Source: Octopus sinensis
Lineage: Eukaryota
Reading direction: 5' to 3'
Length of the DNA: 64,000 nt
NCBI RefSeq assembly: GCF_006345805.1
Contig: NC_042997.1
Span: 192,820,001 to 192,884,000, forward strand
Shown: positions 1,860-62,654 of the stretch, piece after piece
Layout of the letters: every line of letters begins with the position of its first letter
Position numbering within the stretch: position 1 is the stretch's first letter
Translations under genes and position numbers: made by a program
The notes under the pieces: model-generated
Seen by the model: only the letters and a program-made list of their open reading frames with translations
What the model was told of the DNA's origin: nothing
Databases searched by the model: none

Positions 1860-2201
1860 ACTGTTCAGCTATATTAATTCAAAGGAAAAAAATCCTAGAG
1901 AAAAAACAAAAAAATGTGATATCCAATCACAAAGTAAACCCAATCACTAATAATGCTAAGTCAAGTTATTCACTTACAGCCGCTGCCAAGAACACGGGTC
2001 TCCAAAATAATTTGCCTGTTTTCTCAAAAACTCTTCCAGCTAATATTTCTCATAGCAATGATCTTAGTCATGGTCTTAGCTACAATCAGACTAACAGTGA
2101 TTCTGTAAACAATAATGAATTTAACAAACCAACAGACTGGTATATAAAACGGGGCCTTAATGAGTCTAACACCCGTTGGATTTCAAATCTGAAGAAAAAG
2201 G
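1860..2201 (+). CDS. Candidate cassette exon V1 (114 codons, Ser/Asn-rich), probably of the WIP gene
   Basis: Acceptor gtttttcactttgcag|AC, donor AAGG|gtataa, 342 nt, phase 1-1, open frame; the ORF composition turns to intron-like hydrophobic sequence after the donor. Confidence 0.6.
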
Positions 2202-2396
2202 GTATAATTATTATTGTCGTTTGTAGCTTAGTTAACCCTTGCCTATTTAGTGAGTTTTTCATCAGCTTTGCACTAAAAATGATTTTTAACCTCTTCACCT
2301 GTTTTAAATTAAAATTTTTTTGTGTGTTTTTCATTTTAGCTTTTCCCTATATATTTTTAGTATTTTCCCTAGTGCAAATTAGTTATTTTATAGACA

Positions 2397-2935
2397 CTGA
2401 TGTGGCTGTATGATAAGAAGTTTGCTTCCCAGCCACATGGTTTCTGGTTCAGTCCAGAAAGGCGGCAAACTGGCAGAAACGTTAGCACGCCGGGCGAAAT
2501 GCTTAGCGGTATTTCGTCTGCGTTACGTTGTGAGTTCAAATTCCGCCGAGGTTGACTTTGCCTTTCATCCTTTCGGGGTCGATAAATTAAATACCAGTTA
2601 CGCACTGGGGTCGATGTAATCGACTTAATACCTATGTCTGTCCTTGTTTGTCCCCTCTGTGTTTAGCCCCTTGTGGGTAGTAAAGAAATAGGTTTCTGGT
2701 TCAGTCCCACTGCACAGCTACTCAGGAAAGTGTCTGCTATCATAGCTCCAGGCTGACCAAATCCTTGTGAGAGGATTTGGTAGACAGAAGCTGAAAGAAG
2801 CATGACAAATGTGTGTGTGTGTGTGTGGTGTGTGTGTGTATGAGAGTATGTATGTATGTGTATAAATGTGTGCAAGTGTTACTGTTCTCTTGTCTTGATA
2901 TTGTATGACAGTTGTAAATGAGTGTCATTGTCTTT
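2397..2935 (+). mobile_element. tRNA-derived CORE-like SINE (family B), interrupted by a family A SINE
   Basis: Head tgtggctgta...ggttcagtccc, CORE-like aagtgtctgctatcatagc, (TG)n; split at 2456-2690. Confidence 0.8.
2456..2690 (+). mobile_element. tRNA-derived SINE (family A) with 17-bp TSD
   Basis: A-box-like tggcagaaacgttagc, B box gagttcaaattcc; exact TSD ggtttctggttcagtcc at 2439-2455 and 2691-2707. Confidence 0.92.
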
Positions 2936-2938
2936 CAT

Positions 2939-3769
2939 TTCCAGGTCTTCATGGGTCTACCTCTTCCACAGGTTCCCTCTACTGCTAGGGTGTGACACTT
3001 TCACACAGCTGTCGTCATCTGTATGCAGCACATGACCATACCTGTGCAGTTGTCTCTCTTGCACACCACATCTGATGCTTCTTAAGTCCAACTTTTCTCT
3101 CAGGGTGCTTACACTCTTTCATGTATGCACACTGACATTACACATCCAGCAGAGCATACTGGCTTCGTTCCTTGCAAGCTTATGCATGTCCTCAGCAGCC
3201 ACGACTCATATTTCACTGCCATGTAGCATGGCTATTCGTACACATGCGTCATACAGTCTACCTTATAGTGTGCTGTGCCTGAGAGGACCCATTAAGCCAA
3301 GTGCACCCATGCTGGTGGCATGTAGAGAATACTTTTCAAGTGTTGGACCTCACAGAGGCAAAGTGGTTGAGTTCCTTTTGAGCATTGGGCCTCATGGAGG
3401 CAAAGTGGCTGTGTTCCTTTCGATTGTTGGGCCTCACAGAGGCAATGACCGAGACCTTTGGCATTATGTTGTGCTTGAGAAGAAATCCCATCAAGCCAAG
3501 CAAAATCGCAGTCGTAGCAGATACTGGTGTCATGCAAATTGCCACATAAACACCCCCCGATGTCATGCAAATGGCACCCATGCCGGTGGCACGTAAAAGC
3601 ACCCATTACACTCTCGGTGTGGTTGGCATTAGGAAGAGCATCTAGCCATGGAAAACCATGCCAAATTAGACTGGAGTCTGGTGCAGCCCTCCAGCATGCC
3701 TGTCCAGTCAAACCGTCCAACCCATGCCAGCATGGTTAACAGATGTTAAATGATGATGTTGATGATGAT
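2939..3769. mobile_element. RTE-clade LINE 3' end with 5' inversion
   Basis: Minus segment 2939-3264 encodes degenerate KGRLYDACVR..AMLHGSE...YGHV...GTCGRGRP.KTW. Plus segment about 3270-3769 carries the ORF C-terminus/3' UTR and a (GAT)n tail. Confidence 0.8.
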
Positions 3770-4190
3770 AAACATCTCACTTTTCATGTAGTCACTAATG
3801 ATCATATAGAACTAATTGTGTCACTTAATCCTTCCATCTGGGCCACAAACATTTGAGATTTTCCAGATTTCTGCTCTGCAAAAGTAGAAACAAATTCAGG
3901 AAACTTGTTATATATATTGTTTTCTCTATCAGTGTTTTACAGCTCTAGTTACAAGCTCATTGGGATCGTCTCTCAAGTGGACGTGTATGTTTTGAGTGTG
4001 GATAAGTTTGACGTACAAAGGATAGCATTTAGATAGATTTCATTTTGTAATTAAGTAGATATAAGAGCAAGTACTTTGAGTGTTTACGTTCCTCAGTACT
4101 GAAGTCAATACAACACAAGTTTACAAATTAAGTTTTTATACCCCAGCACATATTTAGATACCAGCATTCCTCTTCCTGATCATCATCTCA

Positions 4191-4237
<47 letters not shown>

Positions 4238-4350
4238 CGTTTTTGGATTTGGTTTGCAAGATTCTTTATATGAGTTTGTGTGTTGAAGCATATTCTGTTG
4301 TGTCTGGGGAGAGTATATATGTCTGTGTGTGTGTGTATATATATATATAC

Positions 4351-4642
4351 ACACTGTTGTGTCTGGGGAGAGTCATTTTCGTTTTGTGCTTTATGATTTA
4401 ACACACTCACCGGTAAAATTTCCACTTATTTCTTATTTTTATTTTCCTAAAATTTTCGTTGCGTCTTGCAACCTTTTCAATAGTCTTGACTCAATGTATT
4501 TATGTATATATGACTATTGAAAAGGTTGCAAGGCGCAACAAAAATTTTAGGAAAATAAAAATAAGAAATAAGTGGAAATTTTACCGGTGAGTGTGTTAAA
4601 TCATAAAGCACAAAAAGAAAATGACTCTCCCCAGACACAACA

Positions 4643-4646
<4 letters not shown>
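4351..4646. mobile_element. Fold-back element in (TA)n/(TG)n, Penelope-like candidate
   Basis: 135-bp arms (4351-4485, 4512-4646), 3 mismatches, 26-bp spacer; partial direct repeat ctgttgtgtctggggagagt just upstream. Confidence 0.8.
4446..4485 (-). ncRNA. Minimal hammerhead-ribozyme-like motif, U3-A8 variant
   Basis: Minus strand GACUA-UUGAAAA-G-GUUGC-aagac-GCAAC-GAAAAUUU-UAGG: 3-bp stem I, 5-bp stem II, GAAA, palindromic stem III. The plus-strand mirror copy at 4512-4551 has G12>A. Confidence 0.55.
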
Positions 4647-4697
<51 letters not shown>

Positions 4698-5120
4698 TAA
4701 ATAATGTAGTAATGATAACAGTTATATAAATATCAAATTTTGTTCTCAGTGTGAATCAGATAATAATAATAGAGATAATTATGTAATTAGTTCTATTTGT
4801 TCTAATGGCAATTCTCCCCATGTTCCTCTTACTTTATCATTTCTAAATAAGAAGCATTTTCTTGTAAGAAGTCTAATTTCTTAGAGAAATTATTATTGTT
4901 GTCTTTTGAATCTTTTCTTTACTTGTTTAATTTACAATATTCATTTTCTTTTGTAATTAGAAATAAATAATTTATTTTGCATTAGTTTTAATTATAGAAA
5001 TATCTAACATAATTAACATATTTGTTTTCAACCCAGATTAGTTTTATTTTCTTAACTAATTAATGTTTTTTTTCTCATATTTCCTGAACTGCCTATAACT
5101 TAACGATTTGCCAATTTCAG

Positions 5121-5804
5121 TTCGTCGGCTATCGGCGTTTTCCTTTCCTGTGATGACATCTTCCAAGTCCAGCTTTGAAATCACACCAAATATGCAATAT
5201 TCTTCTCAAACATCTTCAGTGCCTCAACATTCTCCTAACCAATATGTAGCCCACTTAAAAACAACAAAAGCAGATACATCACCATCATCGTCCCATTATG
5301 CATCACCAGTGTCTCATCAGAATAAGAGCTCTGTTATTATTAACAAACCTGAAAAGACTCAGCAGATGGAATCAGAAATTATCACTACTCCATCTTCTAG
5401 AACTAATCAAGATATCTCTAATGACATAAGTAGTCCTAGCCTTACTAGCTCTGATAATTATCTGTCTCCCTATCAGTATTCTAAACCATATTCTTCTCAG
5501 AGTGTTGAGAATAATATCAATGTTCCCTCAGCAGTACCAGCACCACCATTGATTGAACAGATCCAAGCCAATTTGAAAAAGCTAAAACATAGTTCTCCTA
5601 AAATGGCCAAAGCTAGGACAAGCAGTGGAAATAAATCCAACTTGAAAATTATTCAAGGTTCTCCTTACCATACGTCATCGAAAGCTGCCAAAACACTAGA
5701 ACAGCAGCTTCATTGTCTGCGCAAGACCTCAATCAACCGTAAGACTACATCTTTCGAACCTTCGGCACCAGTCTCAGAATGGAAACAGAAGTTGAAAATG
5801 GATG
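5121..5804 (+). CDS. Candidate cassette exon V2 (228 codons) with WH2-like motifs
   Basis: Acceptor ccaatttcag|TT, donor GATG|gtatac, 684 nt, phase 1-1; encodes PAPPLIEQIQANLKKLKHS and TLEQQLHCLRKT. Confidence 0.68.
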
Positions 5805-8301
5805 GTATACAATGCACAGTTATTAGTTTTAGAGTTTTGTCGTTTGGCACTTTGCATAAGCGTATAATTAATTATAGAATTTCCCATCTTCTTGAACACT
5901 CACACAAACATGTTACCGCCTTGCAAAACTAGTATTCAGTAAGAACTAGCTAACTTTTTATAGCTGTGTTTATCTCTCTCTCTCTCTCTTATTTATAAGT
6001 TGTTTATAATTTAACCTTTAAAGGTATTTTTTAATATGCTGACCATTGATAAAATTTTTTTCGAAAAATTTTATCCTACATTAGATATATATATATATAT
6101 ATTACTTTATATAATTACAAGTATAATTATAATTAGGGTTCAGCAAAATAAAAAATTTGCTTTGCCACATACCAAGCTTTTAGAAATAGCAGCCAGAGAA
6201 CTTAGCTATTTCTTCTACTGTAAGAAAGATCTCCCAGACAATGTATACTCAAAAACTATTCACGTAGGCATAGAGGAAAAAATAACAAAAATTCACCAAA
6301 CAAGAATATTATTGATAGTAACTTCAAAGTCACTATCAACAATGTTCTTGCTTAAGACTAATAAACTCTACAAAAGTATAGAGTAACATCTGAGATTAAT
6401 GTAAAATTGTTTTTATTATAAGTGAACATAAAAACAACTATTATGGACATGGCTACATGTCTCAAGCTGGTGTCATGAGAAATGCTTCTTGTACACTATG
6501 TAAGGTGGATGGTGCTAAGGACATCCAGCCATAGAAACCAAGTCAAAACAGAAACCTGAGTGAGAGGAGGTCTTCCAACCCTCTAGGCAAGCAGTGCTCC
6601 TGAGTATATGCTGACTCAGACCATGTGATCCATCTACCCCATGCTAGCATGAAAAGCAGACATAATATGACATATATGTATATAAATATATATATATGTT
6701 GTCATATTATATAATATTATATAATAATCAGCTGCTGGAAACAAACAGCAAAGTTGGTGCTAATGTACCCACCATGATGAGTCAATTAATTTTAATTAGT
6801 TAAAAATTTCTTTGCTCACTACATTATATATGTATGTGTGTTGGTGCCTTCTTTACTATTTTTGTTATTTCTGTTGACTTAGATAAGGCTTTTTGATCAG
6901 ACTTATGGTAAATTTTATGCTATGAACTGATTGCTGACTGTTTTTCTTTCATATGCCTTTAAAATAATTTATCCTTATGAATATGAATATTTCCCATGCT
7001 GTACCAAAGTTTTCTGTGTGATCTACAATGTGTTGGTTTATAAACCTTCGCAGACATAATTGATAAATCTCAAGTATGTTGGATTGGCAGAATCGGACAA
7101 AATGCCTTTGTGCTGTTTAGTTGCATACAACTCTTAATGTTCCGAGTCCAAATCTTGCTGAGATCAACTTTGCCTTTCTATCAAGGTGAATTAACTAAAT
7201 TACCAATTGTGTACTAACGTCAATAGTATTGACTAAACCCATCCCTTCATAATGGCTGTTCTTTTGCCTTCGGTAGAAATAATTATTTATATACTTAAAA
7301 AACCTTGTGAACAATGTGTTCATAATGCTAAACCAACAAGATTGTTGTTTACCCATTTAATTTCAGTATCAGTTTATCTTAATGAGAAATAATTTAAGCT
7401 ACAAGTAATAAAGATTTTAATATTATTTTATTTTAAGGATAGTGGGTGACTAAAACAACAGAGAGAGAGAATGATGGATTAACTATTTTGTAGTATTTAG
7501 TTAAAACAGTTTTATATTTGAGTTCAAATCCTTTCTAAGCCTTTTCGCCCTCCTAGGGTTAAAAAAATATTTACCAGTAGATACTGTTGTCAGTTTAGCC
7601 ATTCCTACCTTCTTTCAAAATATGTGGCACTGAACTTGTCAGAAATCAACATAAATTTATTATTGATTTTTCTTTTAATTAGTATGTGTATGTAATTTTT
7701 TTTGCTTGGTACATCATTATAGAAACTTTGGAAGCTGTAGACTTTTCAAAGTGTGACTGATTTCTTTGCCTGTGTTAGTAGATGCTAACATATGCCCACC
7801 ACACTGACATGTCAACATAGCAGCAAAAGATTTAATGCCAGCTTTAAAGACTTAATAACTACAGATTCCCATAAAGTTTTACACTAAGAAATTATTCAAC
7901 CTATTATCTGTATCATTGGTTCTAAATCATTTTTTGCCTATAGTCCCCTTTCACTTTACTGAACCTCCATTGCCATTCAATATGTATTTAAAAAAATCCT
8001 TCTGTATTTTATAATTAAATGTTATTAGGAACTACATAAAAAAAAGTAAAGTATTTTGTGCATTGTAGAAGTGTAAACAACTTATTATTCATAAATTTTA
8101 ACAACAAAATCTTACATGAATTCCCAAGAGTCATGTAGACCCAATTGAGAACTATTGGTCTATATTGTTGTGGGCTTTTTTTTTTTTTTTTTTGAAACAG
8201 TAGTAATTAATTTAAAGCTTATAGAATTGAGAATCTATGTTTTTATAATCTACCTCTCTGTTCTCTTTTTGATTATAATTTGAATAATTTAAAATTTTCA
8301 G

Positions 8302-9102
8302 CTCCCAGTTTCCATAGATTTTCTGCTTCCCGTTTGAATATTCGCCAACCTGGAACTCCCCGGCATCGTTCTGCAGCTATGTCTCATTTTAGACCTGTAG
8401 CTTCAACAAACACTCCGAACTCTTACAATTTGACTAAACCTTCTTCAAATATTGTTGCAACTAACTCCACTAATGTTTTAACTGTTGCTGCTAAATTTTC
8501 TAACTTCGACCAACAGCAAGTATATCCAAAAGAGACTAAGAAAGAATGTATCATCTACGAAAAACCTCAACTGTCCTCCCAAAAGTATAAAAGTCCAGTA
8601 ACTAGTATTTATGAATCTGCAGCAGTTTTTGAACAACCCAAAAATTCAGCATACAAACTACCTAAACAGTTTTCACAACAATCTACAGTATCACAAACAA
8701 CTTCTGAGGAAAAACCGGCAGAATTTCTGGAAGTTACTCTGAAATCGACAAAGTTTTCAACTTTATTTTATGGTGCTAAAAAAGATCCCAAGAAGGATTT
8801 CACACCATTCGGAAATTACAACCGATCACCTTACGGGAACCCGTCTTTATTTAAGAGTAATAATAATCTAAACCCGTATGCAAGATCCGTTTCCTACCAC
8901 GGGCCACTTTCAGAAGCTTCCTACTCAAAGTCTTCACAAAGCTCAGGCAGTTATTTCCAACCAATTGGTTCATTCTTCCAGCCTTCGTTTATGTCCCATT
9001 CTGAGAGAGGATATTCAGAAAATACCTATCAAATGTCAGCTTCGGCACCATCACTGGTTCAAAATCGTATCAAATGGGCACGGAACATGTCTTCATATGA
9101 TG
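8302..9102 (+). CDS. Candidate cassette exon V3 (267 codons, Ser/Thr/Tyr-rich)
   Basis: Acceptor aaaattttcag|CT, donor GATG|gtattg, 801 nt, phase 1-1, open frame; contains EFLEVTLKST and SLVQNRIKW. Confidence 0.68.
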
Positions 9103-9990
9103 GTATTGTTCCTGTTGTGTTCCTTCCCCTTATGCACATAGTTTCCTTCTGCTATACAGCTCATTTCTACCCACTGTTTTGCATACAATCTAAAGGTTTA
9201 GTGGCAAAGCTTCAAACTCTGGCACCGAAAAGAGGGGGGAAAAAATACCAAAAAATCATATAAACAAACCCATAAAAAGTAATTTATAATTAATTATATC
9301 GTTATTGAGGTTAATAAGGATGTTGGAGTATCATCATTAAAATTGAGGTTATTTAATTGCATTCTTTTCTAATCTGAGCAAAAATCATGATTAAACCGAC
9401 TTACCCATGAGTTGATTAGATAATTATTTGTAACATAGTAAAATACCCTGAGTTGGCAGAATTGTTGGCATGCTGGGCAAAATGCTTAGTGGCACTTCAT
9501 TAATTCTTTTACTCTTTTGACTGCAGCCATGCTGGGGCACTGCCTTTTAGTTGAGTAAATCGACCCCAGGACTTATTCTTTGTAAGTCCAGTACTTATTC
9601 TATCAGTCTCTTTTGCCGAACCGCAATGGACTTCCATACAGTTTCTGTCTACCACTCACAAGGCATTGCTCAGTCTAAGGCTATGGTAGAAGGTACTTGC
9701 CCATAGTGCTGCACAGTGGAACTGAACTCAAAACCACGTAGTTGCAAAGCAAGCTTTTTTACCACATAGTCATGCTTATTGATAAAATGTCTGTAATGCT
9801 GCTATGGTAACCTTCTCTCTATATATATATACCAGAGATCTTGTGTAATAATTAATGCGTCCTCCCTCCAAAGGTAATAGCTGACTTAAAATGGTTATGA
9901 CTGAATCATAACCATGCTTTGGCCTTCACTTGCGGTCACTTTACAATTATTGATTGGTGCCTGTTTAATATTACTGGCTGTCTCAATACC

Positions 9991-10212
9991 TATTTCTTTA
10001 CTACCCACAAGGGGCTAAAAACAGAGAGGACAAACAAGGACAGACAAACGGATTAAGTCAATTATATCGACCCCAGTGCGTAACTGGTACTTAATTTATC
10101 GACCCTGAAAGGATGAAAGGCAAAGTCGACCTCGGTGGAATTTGAACTCAGAACGTAACAGCAGACAAAATATGGCTACGCATTTCGCCGGGCGTGCTAA
10201 CGTTTCTTCCAG
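9991..10212 (-). mobile_element. SINE family A, 5'-truncated, 9-bp TSD
   Basis: Reverse complement of the 2456-2690 element; ctcaatacc at 9982-9990 and 10213-10221. Confidence 0.88.
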
Positions 10213-10552
10213 CTCAATACCAGTTGTGCTAGGTTGTCACTGATTGATAAGTGTAACTAGTAGTCTGTGCCTTTCTATATACAGTGAGGTAAAATGAACT
10301 GGCAAGAGTTAAGTACTCTTGCATGAGAGATGTTTAAGTGCTAATGATACATTATGAGCCATCAGTTGCTCATGTCCATTTGACTTCATTTACTTCTCTC
10401 ACTTCAATTGATATACAAGAACAACCAATTGTATTAGATTTGTGATTCACCATTGATGGTTTAAATGATTAATTCTAAGCCAAAATTAATCGACGTGTTT
10501 AACCAGCCAATTGCCAATTGATTAAAAAAACATTAGTTGGAAAATGAGAATC

Positions 10553-10745
10553 ATCATCATCGTCATTTAACATCCGCTTTCCATGCTAGCATGGGTTGGA
10601 CGATTTGACTAAGGGCTGGCGAACCAGATGGCTGCGCCAGGCTCCAATCTGATCTGGCAGGGTTTGTACAGCTGGATGCCCTTCCTAATGCCAACCACTC
10701 CAAGAGTGTAGTGGAACTCTGAGAGTGTAGTGGCACTCCGAGAGT
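10553..10745 (-). mobile_element. RTE LINE 3' tail copy
   Basis: (ATC)n, palindrome ccatgctagcatgg, ctggatgcccttcctaatgccaaccac; many similar copies across the window. Confidence 0.75.
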
Positions 10746-11083
10746 GTAGTGAATATAAAAATAAAGCAGTTAAGTAAAGAAATCTGAAAATTATATTTAT
10801 ATCAAGTAGTTTGTTGATGGTCACTAAGGAGCAAGGAATAAATTCCCACCCTGCTTCTCCGAGGACATAGTTTCAATTCCATGTAGAAGCTAATTCATTC
10901 ATGTGTGTGTAATAGACAATAAGCAAAATAAGAGATGACAAGGGTGGGACAAGTTTTAACAAATGTATTCATTTGACATTTAAAAGGAAGAGAAAGAGTC
11001 TTGATGTTTCAGACATTAATCCATCTTTAAAAAATATAAAAATTGTGGGAAATGTGTGTGTTCGTGCATATGTTTAGATCCAC

Positions 11084-11474
11084 AGGCGCAGGAGTGGCTG
11101 TGTGGTAAGTAGCTTGCTAACCAACCACATGGTTCCGGGTTCAGTCCCACTGCGTGGCATCTTGGGCAAGTGTCTTCTGCTATAGCCCCGGGCCGACCAA
11201 TGCCTTGTGAGTGGATTTGGTAGACGGAAACTGAAAGAAGCCTGTCGTATATATGTATATATGTATATGTGTGTGTGTTTGTCCCCCCTAGCATTGCTTG
11301 ACAACCGATGCTGGTGTGTTTACGTCCCCGTCACTTAGTGGTTCGGCAAAGAGACCGATAGAATAAGTACTGGGCTTACAAAGAATAAGTTCCGGGGTCG
11401 ATTTGCTCGACTAAAGGCGGTGCTCCAGCATGGCCACAGTCGAATGACTGAAACAGGTAAAGAGTAAAGAGTAA
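11084..11474 (+). mobile_element. SINE family B, full length
   Basis: ggcgcaggagtggctgtgtggtaag head, B box ggttcagtccc, CORE-like cttgggcaagtgtcttct, internal (TA/TG)n, (AGAGTAA)n tail. Confidence 0.88.
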
Positions 11475-12068
11475 TGTATTTTCATTGATACTATTTAGCT
11501 AATAGTGATGACTTTTAATTCCGACATAAGTAAGCAAAAATATGTCACTTTAACAGTTCATGTGAAGTTGTGGAATAGTTGGCTTCATTTGTAAAAATAA
11601 GTGAGGGTCAATATTAGAAAGAGCTTCTAATCATAAAATGCTGCCTCTACAAGTCTTTTCTAATTCAAGCCAACATGGAAAAAGTAGTCATAAAAACGAT
11701 GGTGATGACTGATAGATATCAAGAGTGAAGAAGGAAAACCTATATACATGATCACGTGATTGACCAGACTATTGAATGTTGTACATTGCTGGTCACAATG
11801 CACTTTGCATTGTTTTAGCTTTCAAATAATGCCTCCTCGCTGGTTAGGTGAGCAGGCCAATATTCCATCACAGGGTTATTCATTTACATCTTACATCTGA
11901 GTAGATTGGTGTGTTGTGAAATTATGCGTTTTGCTCAAGGACACAACATGCCACCTGGTTCGGGAATCAAACCCACAATCCAGCAATCATGAGTGCTATG
12001 CTCTAATCACTAGGTCATGCGACTTTATTCATATGTAAATAACAATTAGATTCAATAATAGTAGTATT

Positions 12069-12544
12069 GTGGAGGCGCGTGGCATAAGATTGTGGTTTCG
12101 ATTCCTGGACAGGGCGACATGTTGTGTTCTTGATCTAAACACTTCATTTCACATTGCTCCAGTCCACTCAGCTGGCAAAAATGAGTAACGCTGCAATGGA
12201 CTGGCTTCCCATCCAGCTGGGGAACACATATACCATGGAAACCGGGCCCATGAACCTGGCTAGGCTTTAAAAGGGCACACTTGTGGAGGCGTATGGCTTA
12301 GTGGTTAGGGTGTCAGCATCATGATCGTAAGATTGTGGTTTCGATTCCTTGACTGGGCGACGTGTTGTGTTCTTGATCTAAACGCTTCATTTCACATTGC
12401 TCCAGGCCACTCAGCTGGCAAAAATGAGTAATGCTGTGATGGACTGGCGTCCCGTCCAGCTGGGGAACACATATGCCATAGAAAAAAAGGAAACCGGGCC
12501 CATGAGCCTGGCTAGGCTTTAAAAGGGCGCAAGAAAGAAGAAAG
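12069..12544 (+). mobile_element. Head-to-tail dimer of tRNA-SINE family C
   Basis: Two gtggaggcg...gtttcgattcc...gctccagtccactcagctgg units; single 12-bp TSD aatagtagtatt at 12057-12068 and 12545-12556. Confidence 0.85.
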
Positions 12545-13323
12545 AATAGTAGTATTAGTGAGTTACAATGTAGACAAAATTGAATTCAACTTATTAGCCT
12601 CATTAATTTAACAAAATTAATCAAACAAATACCCACTGCCCAAACTCTTATTGCCATGTAGTGTTAGATTCACTAGATTTAGTAAATTCAGTTCAGTGTT
12701 TTCTAAATTCTCTGTGTTCTGAATTGATGAAATGTGTTGCCGTATTTGATTTGAACCTAACACTTCCCTTTCACTTCTTTGCAGCTTAGTTACCCACCTG
12801 AAAAGCAGTACCACCCGTTTCAGGGAAAGCACTGTTGTATAGATCAGTGGAAATAGTTTTGATTTACTTATGCACTTTAGACCTTTTTTTATTCGATTCT
12901 GATTTCTCTGTTTTATAATATCTTTTTATTGTTAAGTGATGTGTGAGTATTGATTACTGATAAAATAATTTTTATTTATTATTTGCATTTTTTAAACTTA
13001 CATTGTTTTGTCTGTAATTTTCGTATTTATATCTGGTAATTAATATTAAATGACATATTTCTGGTATTTGAAGAATTGTATTTAGTGAACGATATTCTCT
13101 GCCCTTGAGAACTGTTTTGATTTTAAGTTGTTTTCTCGATTTTTGTTTTATTTATTTATTTCAATTTTTTAATCATTAGTATTGTTATTTGTACTCTAAA
13201 TAATTTTTTAATTGAAAATTCTTTTTATAGCAAAAATGTACATTATTTATAATTATATCTTACTTGTAGTCATGAATAGTATATAAAGTTACCTCCCTTG
13301 TGACAGATTTGCTTCCCTTTTAG

Positions 13324-13353
13324 GCTGTCAGCCATGTTACCATTCCACTTTTT
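13324..13353 (+). CDS. Candidate 30-nt microexon (GCQPCYHSTF)
   Basis: Acceptor tttgcttcccttttag, donor TTT|gtaagt, frame-preserving and open in phase 1; splice-signal evidence only. Confidence 0.25.
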
Positions 13354-14259
13354 GTAAGTGGATCATTCCAAAATACAAAATATATACAACTTGTAGTATC
13401 TGAAATTCAGAAATGATTTGTGTTAAATATTTACAGCCACTTACTATACCACAAAATAATACTGACTGAGGAAATGGTATAAATTATCGTATCTAGATCA
13501 ATGTTAAGTTTCTGGGTTCTCCACAAGATTTCATATTTCATTGTCAAATGCACACCTCCAATTATTTTTAATGCCTAATAGAATAGGAATTATTAATTGG
13601 TGCCTTGTAGTAGGCAATACTGTATGATAGTAATTATTTTGGCTGGGAATAAAGTTTGCGATCCCATTTATAATCTCCAAATAGAATCATTCTTGTATGT
13701 CTCCAAATTGGATGATGCATGAATGTTACAAATTCCCCTTTCTGTATCAAGCTAAAGCTTTTTTTTTTTTATATATATATTTTTATTTAATTGTTGCCTG
13801 ATAGTCAATCGCTCTATCTGCAAACAGAGAGGTTGTGACTTGCAGGGAATTGATATGGTTAATTTTGATTTTAAGATGTTGGAGATTATTTTGTTGAGAA
13901 ATAGTTATTGGTTCGAAAGACTATGTGTAAACGTTTGATGTTGAATGTAATGAAAAAAGGGACAAGAAATAGTCCTAATGATCTGAGTTTTTCTCTTTAG
14001 AAGTAGAAGAAGCAAATATTTGAGCATAATGACACATTAAAGATTGGTTATCAATGATGTTGGTGTGGGGCTAGTCACACAGATGATTTCTGAATATGTA
14101 ATATTTTGCCTTCAAACTTTGACTTTCTTCTACAATTTTATCTTTGATTTTAATATTTATATGACAATATTCTATAATTTAAGATATGTTTTAACTCACT
14201 GTGCATGGCGTTTTCTGTAAAATATAGATTTTCTTCTAAATCTTCTTTTTCCCTATCAG

Positions 14260-14376
14260 TATCTTTGGACCATTTCTTCATTGCAGCTAATCAAAGTACA
14301 GATACAAAAGATGATACAGTCCGATCTTTGGTCAAAGACCGTATCAACTCTTGGGGAGGACATTATAAAGATGAGG
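14260..14376 (+). CDS. Candidate cassette exon V4 (39 codons)
   Basis: Acceptor tcttctttttccctatcag|TA, donor GAGG|gtataa, 117 nt, phase 1-1; VSLDHFFIAANQSTDTKDDTVRSLVKDRINSWGGHYKDE. Confidence 0.62.
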
Positions 14377-15765
14377 GTATAACTGACTTTATCTTTTAAA
14401 GTTTTGATGTATCAGTAGCAATGGTCACAACAGGTAGTTAGTTGCACCTGCATGTATATGTTCAGTAAAATATGTTTATCACTGAATATTGCCATAGTTT
14501 TCTCCCACAATTTGGTTCTACAACCTTTTAAGTCAATTATGTAATCACCTGCTTATTAATGAGGTTCCTGTCCTGAACATCTCACATATATATACTATAG
14601 CATTTAAAAAACCTTGGCTCAGTATTTAGTATAGAACTAAATATTCTAAATAACTACTGCTTAAATGAAATACTTAATGAAAACTATTAATAAACGTAAT
14701 CAATAATGTTCAGTGTTAAATGACCTGTAGATGAGTTGCCAATATTGTATGTTAGTGTACTGTACAATATCAGATATTTGAGAAAATAACTAGAAACCTA
14801 TATATCTTACAAATAATTCTGGATGCAAGTTATTTAGAAGTTAATATTGTGATAGTTAATTAAGGTCAATAGAAATTGTTAATCTGGTACTAACCTCAAA
14901 TCATTATTTTAGATTTCTAAGAAGTATTCATAGGATTGTAATGAATATATGTAAATGTAGCTTAACCAGAACTTGTTAATATTATTTAGAATGTTTCAAC
15001 AAAAATAGTAAATGAACGCTGTAGAAAAACAGTGTGGCTATAGAAAAGAAGTGTGCCTAATGATTTTAAATTTTGATTAGAAAATTTTAGGCATTTGAAA
15101 ATTATAACTAAAATTTTTTTATTAAGTCCAAATCTTTTCTTTTCTCATTTTTTCTTTCTTTTTTTTTTTTGTATATGTACTATCAAATAACTCTTGCTTG
15201 AAAATATTAGTCATTAATTATTCAATTTATAGATAAATATTTTTTTTTCAGATTCTCTCTTTCATAATACCTTAAACAACACCCATTGACATAAGAAATA
15301 ATAGTTATTTTTCTATTTTATAAACAGTTTATGAAATTCCACCTACTTAGAATTCTTTTAAAAATACTAACAAATTTTTCTGGCTACTGTCTATATGTCT
15401 ATATATATAAGGTGCATTATAGAAGTCAAGGCATGACAGGGATCTGGTGATAGTAAAAGATTACAGAAAACAAGCACAATGTCAGGAAAGCTATTTTCAT
15501 ACCTAATTCCTATCCTGTTCCCCCTTTTCTGTCGTCACAATATTTTTTTTTTGTTCACTTTCATTTGTTGTCTTATGGTCATTGATGTATATACTGTTTA
15601 ATTTTTATTTGCTTTATCATAGTAATGATATTGAGCATCATTTAGTTATATACACCATATTTACTTGTGTATAAGTTTCACTATTTTACGCTTGATTTTA
15701 ACTGGAAAAACTGCAGCAACTTACACACAAGCCTGACTTATACACATGTAATTATGGTGTGTTTA

Positions 15766-17098: not shown

Positions 17099-17329
17099 AG
17101 CGGTGAGCTGGCAGAAACGTTAGCACGCCAGGCAAAATGCTCAGCAGTATTTTGTCTGCCGTTAGATTCTGAGTTCGAATTCCACTGAGGTCGACTTTAC
17201 CTTCCATCCGTTCTGAGTCAATATATTTAGTACAAGTTATGTACTGGGGTCGATGTAATCGACTTAATCCCTTTGTCTGTCTTTGTTTGTCTCCTCTATG
17301 TTTAGCCCCTTGTGGGCAATAAAGAAATA
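17099..17329 (+). mobile_element. SINE family A
   Basis: Near full-length match to 2456-2690. Confidence 0.88.
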
Positions 17330-27112: not shown

Positions 27113-27719
27113 CACACACATACATGCACACATTAAAAAAAACACTAGGCTGTGATTTTAGAAGATTTAGCTGCTATTTCTATTGTCAAACAGTCTTGTA
27201 AAGGCTTCTTTATTGGTTTCATGTATACTGGGTGTGTATATATATATATATATATCTATGTGTCTGGGGAACTGTAGATCCCTTTTAACTATACGTATCG
27301 GGTTGTGTTGCTTACTATATCCATAGTTATGTGTGTACATATTATGTGCCGTTATGTATTTCTCTACCAATTTCTACTCGTGCCTCTGTCGTCTTATCTT
27401 CAATACCGCCTCTCTCTTATTCTTTCAAATGTAAACTATTTCATTTATTTATAGTTCGGCTATTATTACCGTTCCCTATTCATTTTCATTTTTTTTTCTT
27501 TCTTTCTTTCTAGCAGAAAAGCCCATATATTATATTACTATATAATTTAGGCGCGAGCGAGCGAACCTCTTAGATTTGGCATAGATAATTTTGTCTTTGT
27601 GCCCTAACAGTAGAAAAGTGTTGATGACTACATTCCAGTAGTCGTTCATACAATTCCTTAACTCAGCCCTAACAATCCTCCACATCCAAGTAACTCCTCT
27701 ATTGTGGTTGATATTACTC

Positions 27720-27726
27720 TGTGAGC

Positions 27727-27808
<82 letters not shown>

Positions 27809-28366
27809 GTATGTGTATGTATGTGTGTATGTGTATGTATGTGTGTATGTGTATGTATGTGTATGTGTGTATGTGTATGTATGTGTGTATGTGTATGTAT
27901 GTGTGTATGTGTATGTATGTGTATGTATGTGTGTATGTGTATATATATGTGTGTATGTGTATATATATGTGTGTATGTGTATATATATATGTATGTATGT
28001 ATGTGTATATATGTATGTATGTGTATATATATATGTATGTATGTGTATATATATATGTATGTATGTATGTGTATATATATATGTATGTATGTATGTGTAT
28101 ATATATATGTATGTATGTATGTGTATATATATGTATGTATGTATGTGTGTATATATATATATGTATGTGTGTATATATATATATGTATGTATGTGTATAT
28201 ATATATATGTATGTATTGTATATATATATATGTATGTATGTATGTGTATATATATATGTATGTATGTATGTATGTGTATATATATATGTATGTATGTATG
28301 TATGTGTATATATATATGTATGTATGTATGTATGTGTATATATATATGTATGTATGTATGTATGTG

Positions 28367-28435
<69 letters not shown>
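27720..28435. repeat. Compound (TA)/(TG)/(TATG) microsatellite, about 715 bp
   Basis: Almost unbroken purine-pyrimidine alternation. Confidence 0.95.
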
Positions 28436-29060
28436 TAGGGGTACGTTACGCCTCAATAATATATGTATAGAAATTAAATATAAATTATAAATTACAAAGT
28501 GGGACAAGAACGCAAAAACACACAAAGAGACGACACAAAAAAAAAACAGACGGGTCACTCGAAGCCTCTAATCTTCAGTCGGAAACCACCGGATCATCTT
28601 ATGTATATATGTATGTGGTAATATTTTGACAATTGTGCTATATAAAAATTTTTCACATTGTCAAACTGCTGAACCTGTCAGCAAGTCTATCTCGAGGTGG
28701 CAACCGAATCTGTTACTAAATTTATGTAAGCATTTATTTTGCTACTACCGCGTGTCTCTTGTTCCTCTCCTCTATCCTACATGTAAATATATATATGTGT
28801 ATGTTTATATATGTACACCACACACACACACACAGCAGTCCTTTAAGAATTGCAGTGTGTGTGTGTGTGTGTGTGTGAATCTAAATTCCAATTCTTCAAG
28901 GTTCTTGTCAACAGTACAGTTTGGCAATTAAAAAAATTGATATTGTAATTAAAGGGTGTAGTAATTATAATGGAAAGAGAAATATAGTTTGTTGTGATTG
29001 TGAGATTTGTGGTGGGAGGAAGGGGTCCAACTTCATTTTACATTTAAACTTTTTCTTCAG

Positions 29061-32803: not shown

Positions 32804-33411
32804 TCATTTGCTTTTAGAACATTTTGAAATTCATCACCATCATTTTCTGCATTCCTCAGTCTCTTTGTGTGTCTGTGTAATCTAAATTTCATTCTGTATT
32901 CATATCTCTATTTTTCCATCACATCTGTCCTCATTCACTCTCTCTCCAAAAAAAAAAATGTAATTTTTACTCTGTGCATATAAAACAGAAAATAAGAAGA
33001 GGGAAAATGTGTTGATTTCTTTGTAATATGTTTGATTTAATCTACAAGTTTTATTTATTTATATATATATGTATATGTTTTTTTTTTTTTTTTGAGCGCA
33101 ACACATTTTTCTGTTGCTCTCATAGTAAATTATTTAATATGAAATCTCCAAAGGATTTGCAGGAGTAACATTTTGTTCATGGAAATTTTTTATTTATATT
33201 TATTTTTTTTTACATATCATTCTATCTTCTGTTTCATTTCTTACTCTTTATTTCATTGCATATTAATCTTTTTTCTCCCTCATTTCTTGTTCTAAAGAAA
33301 ACAGTCATGAGCAAGTATATTATTATCATAGTATATTTCAATGATTTTTTTATTTTCAATTGTAATAATTTCCATTTTAATTATTAACGCTTTCTTTAAT
33401 GTTATCCCCAG

Positions 33412-33549
33412 GTAAGAAATCAAATGACAGCTCACCACGAGGTGGCGGAGGTTTTCCTCCAAACAAAATTGGAGGCATGGCTGGCGAGTTATTCCCTGGA
33501 GGAATACCAAAATTTGCAAACAAAGGTCAAAAACAGAGAATACCAGCAG
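33412..33549 (+). CDS. WIP: WIP/verprolin constant exon (Gly-rich, GELFPGGIPKF)
   Basis: ttatccccag| acceptor, CAG|gtaagg donor, 138 nt, phase 1-1; matches the WIP-family GGLFxGGxPKL block that follows the WH2 domain. Confidence 0.85.
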
Positions 33550-33813
33550 GTAAGGTTTTAATAACTTAAGGATCTAGTCATGTTAACAATATATCAGTAT
33601 GTATGCTTGCATCTCCAAAAATAGCCATCATCGTTGTCATCACTTAATATCCATTTTCCATGCTGGCATCAGTTGAACAGTTTGACAGGAGTTGGCAAGG
33701 CCAGGGGCCGCATCAGGTTTCATAGTTTAGGCTTGGTTTCTACAACTGAATATCCTTCCTAGCACCAACCATTTTGCAGAGTGGACAGAGCATTTTTTGT
33801 GGCACTAGCACCA

Positions 33814-34437
33814 GTGCTTTTTGCATGGCACCATCACCAGTGCTTTTCACATGGTACCATCACCAGTTCTTTTCACATGGTACCATCACCAGTTCTTTTT
33901 ACATGGTACCATCACCAGTTCTTTTCACATGGTACCATCACCAGTGCTTTTCACATGGTACCATCACCAGTGCTTTTCACATGGTACCATCACCAGTGCC
34001 TTTCACATGGGACAATCACCAGTGCCTTTCACATGGGACCATCACCAGTGCCTTTCACATGGGACCATCACCAGTTCTTTTCACATGGTACCATCACCAG
34101 TGCCTTTCACATGGGACCATCACCAGTGCTTTTCACATGGTACCATCACCAGTTCTTTTCACATGGTACCATCACCAGTGCTTTTCACATGGTACCATCA
34201 GCAGTGCTTTTCACATGGTACCATCACCAGTTCTTTTCACATGGTACCATCACCAGTGCCTTTCACATGGTACCATCACCAGTTCTTTTCACATGGTACC
34301 ATCACCAGTGCCTTTCACATGGTACCATCACCAGTTCTTTTCACATGGTACCATCACCAGTGCTTTTTGCATGGTACCATCACCAGTTCTTTTCACATGG
34401 TACCATCACCAGTTCTTTTCACATGGCTCCATCACCA
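33814..34437. repeat. 26-bp minisatellite, 24 units
   Basis: Unit gt(g/t)c(t/c)tttcacatgg(t/g)accatcacca; 624 bp = 24 x 26; embedded in a minus-strand RTE 3' tail. Confidence 0.95.
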
Positions 34438-35576
34438 GTGCTTTTTATGTGACACCAATATATCACAGGTATGGCTATGTAGTTGAGAAGCTAACTTTGC
34501 AAGAACATGGTTTTCAGTTGAGTCTTCATTGCATGGCATCTTGGCCAAGTGTCTTCGATTACAGCTTTAAAATGGCTAATACCTTCAGTTTGACCTTGAT
34601 ATGTGAAAACTTGGGCAAGTGTCTTCTATAGCCTCAGGTTAACCAACTCCTTGTGAATGAACTTTGGTGAATGGGGACTGTGCGTAAGACCATCGCATGT
34701 GCACATGCACATCAACACTTCTTGCGACTAGCAGTGATGTTTATATCCTCCGTAGGCAAACACTGACCATGACAGTAACTGATGATCAATTTACTCATCT
34801 GTTTTGACATTGCTTGCAGAAATAAGTGGGCAAGGAGTTTGTTTGGAGGAAGGACTAGTTTAACATGGATCTAGCAAGTAAGATACAATAAAGTGCTGGG
34901 AAACTGGCTGAGAGATGGTCCTGGGTGGAGAGGATATGTGACAAGCTCTTCATTGTAGTTCTTGTGGAGAAGTGTGGCCTTGTGGCCAGAGTATTCAGCT
35001 CACAATCATTAGTCATGAGTTCAATTCCCAACAGCACACTGTGTCCTTGAGCAAGACTCTTTATTTCATGTTGCTCCACTCCACTGGCAAAAATGAATTG
35101 TACCTGTATTTCAAAGGGCAAACCTTGTTACACTGTGTCATGCTAAATCTCCCTGAGATGATTACATTAAGAGTACTCATGTCGGTGGAGTGCTCAGCCA
35201 CTTGCTCGTTAATTTCATGAGCAGGCTGTTCCATTAATCAGATCAACTAGAACCCTCATTATTGTAACCGACAAAGTGCCAGTTTAGCCCTGGGTCAACT
35301 CAGATTAAGTAGATCTATGATTAAAGACATACAAGCAATGATCTTCTCATCTTTTTTTTAGGGGTTTGTAGGACTATATTATTTAATATGATGGACTTCC
35401 CCACAGTTTCATAACCTACAGAGCACCAGTTCTTTGTAGTTTATGTGGTTTGTTGTGAGAGATTGAGGACCTAGGCAGGGCTGGCATTTATGCATTATTG
35501 ATCTAGAGTACACGTCTTGTACTCCACATATGCATTTTGTTTCTTTCCTTATCATCTATGTGTCCTGTGCCTGTTG

Positions 35577-38824: not shown

Positions 38825-39547
38825 GTAATTCATCTCCAAAACCGGTGCGCTTACCAAATGGACCTACCAATCCGACTGATTTCAGATCCCAACTCAATAA
38901 AAATGTATCAAACGGTGGCTCGGTGATCAATGATAACAAGACTTTGCCACAACGGAACGTACCTGCAACTCGTAAATTTCAGCCTCCAACTCCTCATCCT
39001 GTAAACACTAGCAATGACATCAACAGCAACATCACCAACAATAACCACTCTGTTAATGTTAATACAACCCCCAGCCCATCGCAACACACTGCTGGTGGCA
39101 TTGCAATGAACGTTGGCGGAGGACGTCGGATGCCAGGATCACATCCGCCTCCACCTCCCCCACCACCTCCAGGTCGTCCTCCCTCTCTGCCCAACAACCG
39201 AACACCAAATAAAAACCGGCCATCCAGCATGATTGGAAGGCCTTTACCTCCACCTCCAACATTATCTTCCTCCTCCTCCTCGTCCTCTTCAAGCTCTTCC
39301 TTAAACCGAGCCCAGCCTCCACCACCACCACCACCACCCACACGAGGTCCACCACTCCCTCCTGAAAGGGTAGCCAGTAGCAGTGGGACACTACCAAGGT
39401 CAAAACCTCCAGCTCAGAGGCCTCCTCCTCCACCTCCTACAAGACCACCTGCAGGCCCTTCCCGGGTAATGATCCAAAGTCAAGAAGGCCCAAGTCCTCC
39501 ACAGCGAACATCAAGTAATCTTAGTTCGAGCAGCAACATGAGCATGG
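38825..39547 (+). CDS. WIP: WIP/verprolin proline-rich constant exon (241 codons)
   Basis: tttttctgtatcag| acceptor, ATGG|gtaagt donor, 723 nt, phase 1-1; several poly-Pro tracts and GRPLPPPP / GPPLPPER SH3-ligand-like motifs. Confidence 0.9.
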
Positions 39548-50644: not shown

Positions 50645-50682
<38 letters not shown>

Positions 50683-50719
50683 GTATGTGTGTATATATAT
50701 GTATGTATGTATGTATGCG

Positions 50720-50750
<31 letters not shown>

Positions 50751-50866
50751 GTATGTGTGTATATATATGTATGTATGTATGTGTGTGTGTATATATATAT
50801 GTATGCATGTGTGTATATATATATGTATGTATGTGTGTATATATATATATATGTATGTATGCATAC

Positions 50867-50897
<31 letters not shown>

Positions 50898-62549: not shown

Positions 62550-62654
62550 ATATTACAAAACGTGGCCATTTCCATGATGTATATGAATTTCCACCTCCTG
62601 AGCCTTTTAGTGGGTGTGCAAAGACATACCCTAGTCGTAATTCAAGAAATGCTG
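62550..62654 (+). CDS. WIP: WIP/verprolin WASP-binding-domain exon
   Basis: ttctcttctag| acceptor, CTG|gtaagt donor, 105 nt, phase 1-1; DITKRGHFHDVYEFPPPEPFSGCAKTYPSRNSRNA aligns with WIP ESRFYFHPISDLPPPEPY..TKSYPSK. Confidence 0.92.

What the first reader, a model, noticed from the sequence alone, without database searches (positions are those of the whole stretch)
1860..14376. Cluster of four symmetric phase-1 exons that all end in the same weak G|GTAT donor
Seen: 342, 684, 801 and 117 nt, all multiples of 3, all with pyrimidine-rich AG acceptors in phase 1, and donors gtataa, gtatac, gtattg, gtataa. The constant WIP exons instead use strong gtaag donors. Any subset can splice in frame to 33412. 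Inference: a variable-region cassette of up to 648 aa inserted between the WH2 exon (not in window) and the verprolin core, co-regulated through a shared suboptimal 5' splice site. I do not know such a region from vertebrate WIPF or fly Vrp1.
Basis: partly seen in the sequence, partly recalled or inferred. Interest (0 to 1): 0.72.

Follow-up and report, generated by a model that had tools for sequence, protein, structure and literature searches.

The report
Four conserved optional exons, octopus WIP
Four long protein-coding exons in the first large intron of an octopus WIP (actin-regulator) gene are real, at least two of them predate the octopus-cuttlefish split, all end in the same unusually weak splice signal and are absent from at least one mature WIP mRNA, so they most likely form an optional insert, although no transcript yet proves which gene they belong to.

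Summary
Exons 1860-2201, 5121-5804, 8302-9102 and 14260-14376 have the stated lengths, AG acceptors, phase 1-1 frames and G|GTAT donors. They are the only four intervals on the + strand of the window that fit this pattern.

They are real coding exons. Open frames of this length do not arise by chance in this composition. Against a related octopus, dN/dS is 0.18-0.41, all exon indels are multiples of 3, and the splice sites are kept. E3 and E4 are also present, in the same order, phase and with GTAT donors, in cuttlefish DNA.

The encoded protein has no known domain. The one exon modelled, E3, is predicted disordered, with a few strongly conserved short motifs.

The downstream gene is a WIP/verprolin gene. 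An intronless Octopus sinensis retrocopy joins the WH2 exon directly to 33412, so one mRNA skipped all four exons.

Two things were not shown: that the four exons are ever spliced into WIP mRNA, and that the shared weak donor co-regulates them.

My best reading, at 0.6, is a coleoid-specific optional cassette of WIP. The main rival is an unannotated gene nested in the intron. No named protein in the libraries searched contains these exons.

The parts
1860..2201 (+). E1, 342-nt phase 1-1 coding exon with donor G|GTATAA
   Evidence: Read. Its ortholog P0004/L012 in a related octopus is 92% identical at nt level, with dN/dS 0.29 and acceptor and donor conserved. An in-frame alternative donor GTGAGT at 2250 is put out of frame by a 7-nt indel in the relative.
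5121..5804 (+). E2, 684-nt phase 1-1 coding exon with donor G|GTATAC
   Evidence: Read. Its ortholog is P0003/L011, with dN/dS 0.41, two 3-nt indels only and the donor conserved. It begins with RRLSAF. It contains PPLIEQIQANLKKLKHS, which looks WH2-like by eye but is not scored by Pfam WH2.
8302..9102 (+). E3, 801-nt phase 1-1 coding exon with donor G|GTATTG
   Evidence: Read. Its ortholog is P0002/L002, with dN/dS 0.18. Cuttlefish homologs are P0005 (Acanthosepion esculentum reads) and P0013 (L013 3667-4479, 813 nt, phase 1-1, donor GTATCCTAC). It has four conserved motif blocks. AlphaFold gives mean pLDDT 44 and a single helix at residues 251-262, LVQNRIKWARNM.
14260..14376 (+). E4, 117-nt phase 1-1 coding exon with donor G|GTATAA
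   Evidence: Read. Its cuttlefish homolog lies 3.7 kb downstream of E3 on the same strand (L013 8156-8266, 111 nt, phase 1-1, donor GTATATTT). The shared core is TVRSLV.DRINSWG.
33412..33549 (+). E5, constant WIP exon (glycine-rich, GELFPGGIPKF), phase 1-1, donor GTAAGG. It is the proposed downstream splice partner.
   Evidence: It is 93% identical to the O. sinensis retrocopy L001 10100-10241, where it directly follows the WH2 sequence.
38825..39547 (+). E6, constant proline-rich WIP core exon, phase 1-1, donor GTAAGT
   Evidence: It is contiguous with E5 in the retrocopy (L001 10236-10901, 86%).
62550..62654 (+). C-terminal WIP exon with a WASP-binding-type motif (HFHDVYEFPPPEPF), phase 1-1, donor GTAAGT
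   Evidence: by reading. It shows that the WIP gene spans the window to at least 62.6 kb.

Best explanation
The four exons are lineage-specific alternative cassette exons of the cephalopod WIP (WAS/WASL-interacting protein, verprolin) gene. E3 and E4 are at least as old as the coleoid ancestor.

They lie in the intron of more than 33 kb between the WH2 exon (upstream of the window) and exon 33412. All are phase 1-1, like every other known junction of this gene, so any subset can be included in frame. That would insert up to 648 residues of mostly disordered polypeptide between the actin-binding WH2 motif and the glycine/proline-rich core.

The insert carries conserved short motifs. These are basophilic RRxS/RxS sites at the start of E2 and E3, an EVTLK.TKFS..YG.KKD block, an SYF.P.G.SFF.PSF block, and an amphipathic helix SLV..RI..W at the 3' ends of E3 and E4. 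These motifs are the likely functional units, as docking or phospho-regulated sites.

The donors pair poorly with U1 because they lack +4A, +5G and +6T. Skipping is therefore probably the default, and inclusion needs an activator, which would make the insert tissue- or stage-specific.

Shown here: the exons are real, under selection and ancient; the donors are conserved; and a skipped mRNA exists. Inferred: splicing into WIP, default skipping caused by donor weakness, and the function of the motifs.
For: - The open frames are far beyond chance, and exon GC and codon-position GC are coding-like.
- dN/dS is 0.29, 0.41 and 0.18, with pooled Fisher p = 1e-16. All exon indels are multiples of 3, and acceptors and GTAT donors are identical or nearly so in a related octopus.
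- E3 and E4 are conserved in order, strand, phase and GTAT donor in cuttlefish DNA. One source of that DNA is identified as Acanthosepion esculentum genomic reads.
- tblastx of the cuttlefish contig against the window finds only E3 and E4. No other conserved block, such as a terminal exon, appears in the 6.4 kb after E4.
- The host gene is WIP. E5, E6 and the C-terminal exon read as WIP, and the only database relative is named WIP family member 1-like and carries a Pfam WH2 motif.
- All junctions known for this gene are phase 1.
- The retrocopy joins WH2, E5 and E6 without introns, so the skipped form is a real mRNA.
- The donors match U1 at 5 of 11 positions, against 8-9 for the constant exons.
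- These are the only four such candidates on the + strand.
- Neither E1 nor E4 carries a start or a stop signal. E1 has an acceptor and E4 has a donor.
Against: - No spliced sequence containing any of the four exons was found. All database matches are un-named genomic read-through ORFs of single exons.
- No named or annotated protein in the representative library contains them.
- The only mRNA-derived evidence, the retrocopy, lacks them. That fits equally well with their belonging to another gene.
- Their sequence shows no relation to known WIP regions or to any Pfam or PDB entry.
- A same-strand gene (OTU) is nested in another intron of this WIP gene, so nesting does occur at this locus.
- The baseline frequency of GTAT donors in cephalopod genes was not measured. 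Only three constant exons served as controls.
Confidence: 0.6

Rival explanations
1. The four exons belong to a separate, unannotated, coleoid-specific multi-exon gene. It would be nested on the same strand inside the first long intron of WIP, or would overlap it from upstream. Its first exon would lie upstream of 1860 and its last exon somewhere between 14.4 and 33.4 kb.
For: - The retrocopy of WIP mRNA lacks the exons.
- The encoded sequence shows no similarity to WIP proteins or to any known domain.
- The OTU gene shows that same-strand nesting occurs in this gene.
- Agreement of intron phase with WIP would happen by chance about one time in three for a set of symmetric exons. This figure is my estimate from general knowledge.
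Against: - No start-codon exon, terminal exon or other conserved coding block is visible in 1-1860, in 14.4-33.4 kb, or in the 6.4 kb after E4 in cuttlefish.
- By general knowledge, a multi-exon same-strand nested gene needs its own polyadenylation site inside the host intron. That would truncate host transcripts and is uncommon.
- All four exons share the phase used by every known WIP junction.
Confidence: 0.27
2. The exons are used in WIP transcripts that start at the WH2 exon, or at an alternative promoter, but end shortly after E4 by intron retention or alternative polyadenylation. The product would be a truncated protein without the proline-rich core, not an internal insert.
For: Read-through of the E4 donor meets a stop after 7 codons in the window (KDE-GITDFIF*). 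The 19-kb gap to E5 leaves room for an alternative 3' end.
Against: The immediate stop is not conserved in cuttlefish, where read-through after E4 stays open. The E4 donor itself is conserved in both lineages, which argues that it is used.
Confidence: 0.07
3. The GTAT donors mark U12-type (minor spliceosome) introns, or recent U12-to-U2 conversions, rather than weak U2-type sites.
For: The cuttlefish E3 donor reads GTATCCTAC in two genomes, 7 of 8 positions of the U12 5' splice-site consensus RTATCCTT as I recall it.
Against: - None of the four window donors has the CC at +5/+6: GTATAATT, GTATACAA, GTATTGTT, GTATAACT.
- The acceptors have T-rich tracts ending in CAG.
- No TCCTTAAC-like branch site sits at the right distance before E4 in cuttlefish.
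- The ACTTAAC before E2 is not conserved in the related octopus.
Confidence: 0.03
4. The intervals are chance open frames, transposon remnants or decaying pseudo-exons with no present function.
For: No annotated protein and no known domain was found.
Against: - The probability of such open frames is 3e-4 to 4e-9 for E1-E3.
- dN/dS is well below 1 and indels preserve the frame.
- E3 and E4 are conserved between octopus and cuttlefish with their splice sites.
- Each exon is matched once in each of the related genomes examined, and no repeat-like copies were seen.
Confidence: 0.02

Closest known systems
Vertebrate WIPF1/WIPF2/WIPF3 (WIP, WIRE, CR16), fly Vrp1 and yeast verprolin
   Same: The host gene has the family layout. 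It has an N-terminal WH2 motif (seen in the retrocopy, Pfam 27 bits), a glycine-rich G.LF.GG.PK motif (E5), a proline-rich core (E6) and a C-terminal F.F....PPPEP WASP-binding-type motif (62550-62654).
   Different: To my knowledge, no member of the family has a 648-residue serine/asparagine-rich insert between WH2 and the glycine-rich motif. None turned up in the protein, Pfam or PDB searches. It is not yet shown that the insert is part of the WIP protein at all.
Regulated cassette exons with suboptimal 5' splice sites (general metazoan alternative splicing)
   Same: The exons are symmetric and the donors pair weakly with U1. A skipped mRNA is documented, and a U-rich stretch lies downstream of the E4 donor with marginal octopus-cuttlefish similarity (p about 0.01 before correction for four tests).
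   Different: These are four consecutive and unusually long exons (up to 801 nt) sharing the same GTAT(A/T) donor, which is conserved across a deep split. Inclusion has not been observed.
Tandem exon duplication / mutually exclusive exon clusters
   Same: The exons are neighbouring and of the same phase. E3 and E4 share a 3'-terminal helix motif (SLV..RI..W), and E2 and E3 share an 11-nt string CTTCGGCACCA near their 3' ends.
   Different: The lengths differ seven-fold. Apart from the E3/E4 tails (p about 0.03), pairwise similarity is not above shuffled controls. Nothing suggests mutual exclusion.
Multi-WH2 actin regulators (Spire, Cordon-bleu, thymosin-beta repeats)
   Same: By eye, E2 has PPLIEQIQANLKKLKHS and LHCLRKTSINRK..SAPV, and E3 has EVTLKSTKFS. 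These recall the helix-LKKT/V pattern.
   Different: Pfam WH2 scores none of them even at E = 10, whereas it scores the true WIP WH2. The linker spacing is shorter than in canonical WH2. This is a lead only.
Same-strand nested genes in long introns
   Same: The exons lie wholly inside a host intron, and the OTU gene is nested in another intron of the same host.
   Different: The OTU gene is a single complete ORF with its own start and stop. E1-E4 have neither and are bounded by splice sites.

Membership tests
WIP/verprolin family (host gene) | N-terminal WH2 actin-binding motif | tested here: met
   The WH2 exon is not in the window. The O. sinensis retrocopy of the same mRNA carries it immediately before E5, and Pfam PF02205 scores it 27.2 bits against a cut-off of 23.1.
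WIP/verprolin family (host gene) | Glycine-rich segment with G.LF.GG.PK motif, followed by a long proline-rich core | tested here: met
   E5 reads GGGGFPPNKIGGMAGELFPGGIPKF, and E6 has several PPPPP runs. The comparison with human WIP is from memory.
WIP/verprolin family (host gene) | C-terminal WASP-binding motif (aromatic pair followed by PPPEP) | tested here: met
   62550-62654 encodes RGHFHDVYEFPPPEPFSGCAKTYPSRNSRNA. This was judged by reading; no profile for this motif was run.
WIP/verprolin family (the four exons as part of the protein) | The exons are spliced into an mRNA that also carries WH2 and the WIP core | not testable with these tools
   No transcript data are accessible. Every database match is a genomic single-exon ORF. 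The retrocopy shows only the skipped form.
Alternative cassette exon | Symmetric phase, so that inclusion or skipping keeps the frame | tested here: met
   All four exons are phase 1-1 and multiples of 3. The WH2 exon ends in phase 1 and E5 starts in phase 1.
Alternative cassette exon | Both the skipped and the included mRNA forms exist | tested here: inconclusive
   The skipped form is documented by the retrocopy. The included form is not observed. Purifying selection implies that the exons are translated in some mRNA.
U12-type intron | 5' splice site RTATCCTT | tested here: not met
   The window donors are GTATAATT, GTATACAA, GTATTGTT and GTATAACT. Only the cuttlefish E3 donor (GTATCCTAC) comes close.
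U12-type intron | TCCTTAAC branch site 10-20 nt before the acceptor, with no pyrimidine tract | tested here: not met
   The acceptors have T-rich tracts. The only look-alike, ACTTAAC before E2, is not conserved in the related octopus. There is none before the cuttlefish E4.
WH2 domain (motifs inside E1-E4) | Match to the Pfam PF02205 profile | tested here: not met
   Five segments covering the candidate motifs gave no hit at E up to 10, while the control WH2 scored 27.2 bits.
Tandem exon duplicates | Sequence similarity between the exons above chance | tested here: inconclusive
   In shuffle tests the E3/E4 tails give p = 0.03, WH2 against the E2 tail gives p = 0.08, and all other pairs are not significant. 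The SLV..RI..W core is invariant in E3 and E4 of both octopus and cuttlefish.

The most novel reading that the evidence does not exclude
Coleoid cephalopods have an ancient, unannotated long isoform of WIP. In it, up to 648 residues with their own helical, possibly actin- or calmodulin-binding, motifs and basophilic phosphosites are inserted right after the WH2 domain. Inclusion is controlled by a conserved non-consensus GTAT donor class, possibly a relic of a U12-type intron (the cuttlefish E3 donor is GTATCCT) or the target of a dedicated splicing activator. That would give cephalopods a tissue-specific switch on WASP/N-WASP-dependent actin assembly.
Probability: 0.12. Interest if true: 0.7.

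Novelty: new variant of a known kind. Interest (0 to 1): 0.5.

Why it matters
If the exons are WIP cassette exons, cephalopods have an isoform of a core actin regulator that more than doubles the part of the protein encoded in this window. The extra sequence has been held under selection since before octopuses and cuttlefish diverged, yet it is absent from every named protein found in the libraries searched. This is a concrete case of conserved coding sequence missed by annotation.

It also offers a small, testable set of deeply conserved non-consensus donors for studying how splice-site weakness is maintained.

If instead the exons are a separate nested gene, that gene is a coleoid-specific protein with no known relatives. 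Either outcome corrects the gene model at this locus.

Tried and rejected
- **Pfam:** a scan of the 647-aa conceptual product and of five motif segments found nothing. A PDB sequence search gave only a low-complexity hit at E = 0.03.
- **Word-indexed protein searches:** the search with the 647-aa product found nothing, although relatives exist in the collection. Its negative results are therefore unreliable here. For the same reason, failing to find the true O. sinensis WIP protein with E5+E6 says little.
- **OTU protein look-up:** an exact look-up, meant to locate the source genome and its gene models, found nothing on record.
- **Walking along the cuttlefish contig:** I tried to move from L013 towards a WIP core exon by looking up a neighbouring called ORF.
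- **Metagenome scan:** a scan for E3 relatives found none.
- **Literature:** searches for cephalopod WIP or its splicing found nothing relevant. One paper identified run ERR12945500 as Acanthosepion esculentum short reads.
- **U12-intron reading:** rejected for the window.
- **Extension of E1 to the strong GTGAGT donor at 2250:** rejected, because a 7-nt indel breaks the frame in the related octopus.
- **WH2-like reading of the E2/E3 motifs and general exon-duplication origin:** not supported statistically, except for the E3/E4 tails.
- **Flanking-intron conservation between octopus and cuttlefish:** only a marginal U-rich match downstream of E4.
- **Structure prediction of E3:** disordered with one helix, so no fold search was worth running.

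Full report
**1. The observation**

Reading the window gives these intervals:
- E1 1860-2201, 342 nt
- E2 5121-5804, 684 nt
- E3 8302-9102, 801 nt
- E4 14260-14376, 117 nt

Each follows an AG acceptor, is open when read in phase 1, and ends with G|GTAT. The donors are gtataa, gtatac, gtattg and gtataa. The lengths sum to 1944 nt, or 648 codons. The split codon always starts with G, so no combination can create a stop.

The acceptor tracts are 80, 65, 55 and 80% pyrimidine. E3's tract is A/T-rich rather than clearly pyrimidine-rich.

The four donors match 5 of 11 positions of the U1-complementary consensus. The WIP exons at 33412-33549 (gtaagg) and 38825-39547 (gtaagt) match 9 and 8. A third WIP exon, 62550-62654, also uses gtaagt.

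A scan of the whole window for [Y-rich AG acceptor, phase-1 open frame of at least 90 nt, G|GTAT donor] returns exactly these four on the + strand. On the - strand it returns only three short candidates; by eye two lie in repeat or transposon-like sequence.

**2. They are real coding exons**

With a stop probability of 0.07 per codon in this AT-rich DNA, open frames of 342, 684 and 801 nt have probabilities of 3e-4, 7e-8 and 4e-9. Exon GC (0.34-0.39) exceeds flank GC (0.24-0.30), and third-position GC is lowest, as in the WIP exons.

An exhaustive HMMER search of 1.84 billion representative proteins with the 647-aa conceptual product found four un-named ORFs. Each is a genomic read-through of one exon:
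- P0004 covers E1 at 88% identity.
- P0003 covers E2 at 80%.
- P0002 covers E3 at 88%.
- P0005 covers E3 at 39%.

The first three come from sequencing runs SRR118693xx of a related octopus. Against these contigs:
- The exons are 89-92% identical, while the flanking introns are 74-89% identical.
- All exon indels are 3 nt.
- dN/dS is 0.29, 0.41 and 0.18, with dS 0.21-0.29.
- The acceptors and GTAT donors are kept.
- The excess of synonymous change is significant for each exon, and the pooled p is 1e-16.

A stronger in-frame donor, GTGAGT at 2250, could in principle extend E1. A 7-nt indel puts it out of frame in the relative, which supports the 2201 boundary.

**3. E3 and E4 are old**

P0005 occurs in runs including ERR12945500. 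A cuttlefish genome paper identifies that run as short reads of Acanthosepion esculentum (doi 10.1101/2025.04.22.649952).

A profile search added P0013 on a 92.6-kb ENA contig. It is 77% identical to P0005, so it comes from a second cuttlefish-type genome. On that contig (L013):
- The E3 homolog is 3667-4479. It is 813 nt, follows a ttcag acceptor, is phase 1-1, and has donor G|GTATCCTAC.
- The E4 homolog is 8156-8266, 3.7 kb downstream on the same strand. It is 111 nt, phase 1-1, with donor G|GTATATTT.

A tblastx comparison of L013 with the window finds only these two exons.

Order, strand, phase and the GTAT donor have therefore been kept since the octopus-cuttlefish split. Published clock estimates, as I recall them, put that split at roughly 250-300 million years; I did not test this.

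Conservation within E3 is concentrated in four blocks:
- F.RFSA.RLNIRQPGTPRHRSAAMSH.RP
- EVTLK.TKFS...YG.KKD..K.FTPF..Y....YGNP
- SYF.P.G.SFF.PSF
- SASAPSLVQ.RI.WA.NMS

E4 keeps TVRSLV.DRINSWG.

AlphaFold2 on the four-sequence alignment gives mean pLDDT 44 and a single helix at LVQNRIKWARNM. The product therefore looks like a disordered region carrying short linear motifs. The starts of E2 (RRLSAF) and E3 (HRFSAS, RHRSAA) are basophilic-kinase-type sites by general knowledge.

**4. The host gene**

E5 encodes GGGGFPPNKIGGMAGELFPGGIPKF and E6 encodes a proline-rich core. Exon 62550-62654 encodes HFHDVYEFPPPEPF, the WASP-binding-type motif.

The only database relative of E5+E6 is P0001, named 'WAS/WASL-interacting protein family member 1-like' in Octopus sinensis. 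Its gene is a 603-nt intronless ORF. Locus L001 aligns to the window as follows:
- L001 10100-10241 matches window 33411-33552 at 93%.
- L001 10236-10901 matches window 38822-39537 at 86%, and follows on directly.

Both are preceded by EIHKGTKLRKAVTNDRSAPVV, which Pfam scores as WH2. P0001 is thus a processed retrocopy. It shows three things:
- The WH2 exon ends in phase 1.
- The WH2 exon is not in the window.
- A mature mRNA joined WH2 directly to 33412, skipping all four exons.

Every junction known for this gene is phase 1.

**5. What is not shown**

No sequence joins E1-E4 to each other or to WIP exons. All matches are genomic, including the other members of the 90% clusters.

The word-indexed search missed relatives that do exist. 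Its silence about annotated octopus WIP proteins therefore carries little weight. The exhaustive search would have found any protein model containing these exons, and it found none with a name.

A metagenome scan found nothing.

**6. Explanations**

*Cassette model, 0.6.* Position inside the WH2-to-E5 intron, same strand, and the gene's universal phase 1 all fit cassette exons of WIP. So do the splice sites on both sides of every exon, the absence of any start or terminal exon nearby, and the documented skipped mRNA. Weak, conserved donors fit default skipping with regulated inclusion.

*Nested-gene model, 0.27.* The main rival is an unannotated nested gene. This cannot be dismissed, because an intact OTU-domain ORF (51783-53024, Pfam 1e-14) is nested on the same strand in another WIP intron.

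*Truncated isoform ending after E4.* This is possible, but the stop that follows E4 in the window is not conserved.

*U12-type introns.* This reading fails for the window on both the donor and the branch site. The cuttlefish E3 donor GTATCCT remains a curiosity.

*Shared ancestry of the exons.* This could explain part of the donor similarity, but the evidence is thin:
- The E3 and E4 tails share SLV..RI..W (p = 0.03).
- E2 and E3 share an 11-mer near their ends.
- All other comparisons are at chance level.

*WH2-like motifs.* The motifs seen by eye in E2 and E3 are not recognised by Pfam.

**7. Verdict**

Its suggested conservation test comes out positive. Its assignment to WIP is plausible but unproven, and its co-regulation idea is untested.

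This is a new variant of a known kind: a lineage-specific optional region in a well-known gene, or else a novel nested gene. It is of moderate interest.

Noticed in passing
window 51783-53024 (+): An intact 413-aa single-exon ORF with a proline/serine-rich N-terminal half and a C-terminal OTU cysteine-protease domain (Pfam PF02338, 1e-14). It lies between WIP exons E6 and 62550-62654, so it is nested in a WIP intron on the same strand. It is not on record in the protein collection.
   Followed up: partly
L001 10001-10901 (Octopus sinensis, CM016867.1): An intronless, partly decayed retrocopy of WIP mRNA (WH2-E5-E6). Its first 603 nt are annotated as a protein-coding gene, 'WAS/WASL-interacting protein family member 1-like'.
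   Followed up: yes
window 4314-4683: A large inverted repeat between E1 and E2. The arms are 172 nt and 93% complementary, with a 26-nt spacer, and it is flanked by (TA)n and (TG)n runs.
   Followed up: partly
window 33809-34445: A tandem array of a 26-nt unit, 24.5 copies at 93% match, starting 260 nt downstream of the E5 donor.
   Followed up: partly
window 27500-28570 and 49940-51040: Two kilobase-long TG/TA-rich minisatellite arrays that stay open in several frames on both strands. They account for most of the longest 'ORFs' in the window.
   Followed up: no
L005 and L013 (cuttlefish), donor of the E3 homolog: The donor reads GTATCCTAC, 7 of 8 positions of the U12-type 5' splice-site consensus, in two cuttlefish-type genomes. 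No U12-like branch site precedes E4.
   Followed up: partly
window 5520-5590 (within E2): PPLIEQIQANLKKLKHS resembles a helix-LKK WH2 pattern and is conserved in the related octopus (PPLIEQIQSNLKKLKHS). Pfam WH2 does not score it.
   Followed up: partly
window 14388-14412 and L013 8290-8314: A U-rich stretch shortly after the E4 donor is 20/24 identical between octopus and cuttlefish. The shuffle p is about 0.01 before correction for four tests. It may be an intronic splicing element or chance.
   Followed up: partly
window 54974-56423 (-) and 61557-61694 (-): Minus-strand ORF fragments that read like retroelement and mariner-type transposase remnants. Pfam gave no hit for the three retroelement-like fragments (54974-56423), the only ones submitted.
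   Followed up: partly
window 2459-2627, 10051-10215, 17100-17269, 49172-49330, 63051-63209 and others: Many copies of a roughly 170-nt dispersed repeat, also present in O. sinensis L001 9085-9256 at 80-88% identity. It is probably a SINE.
   Followed up: no
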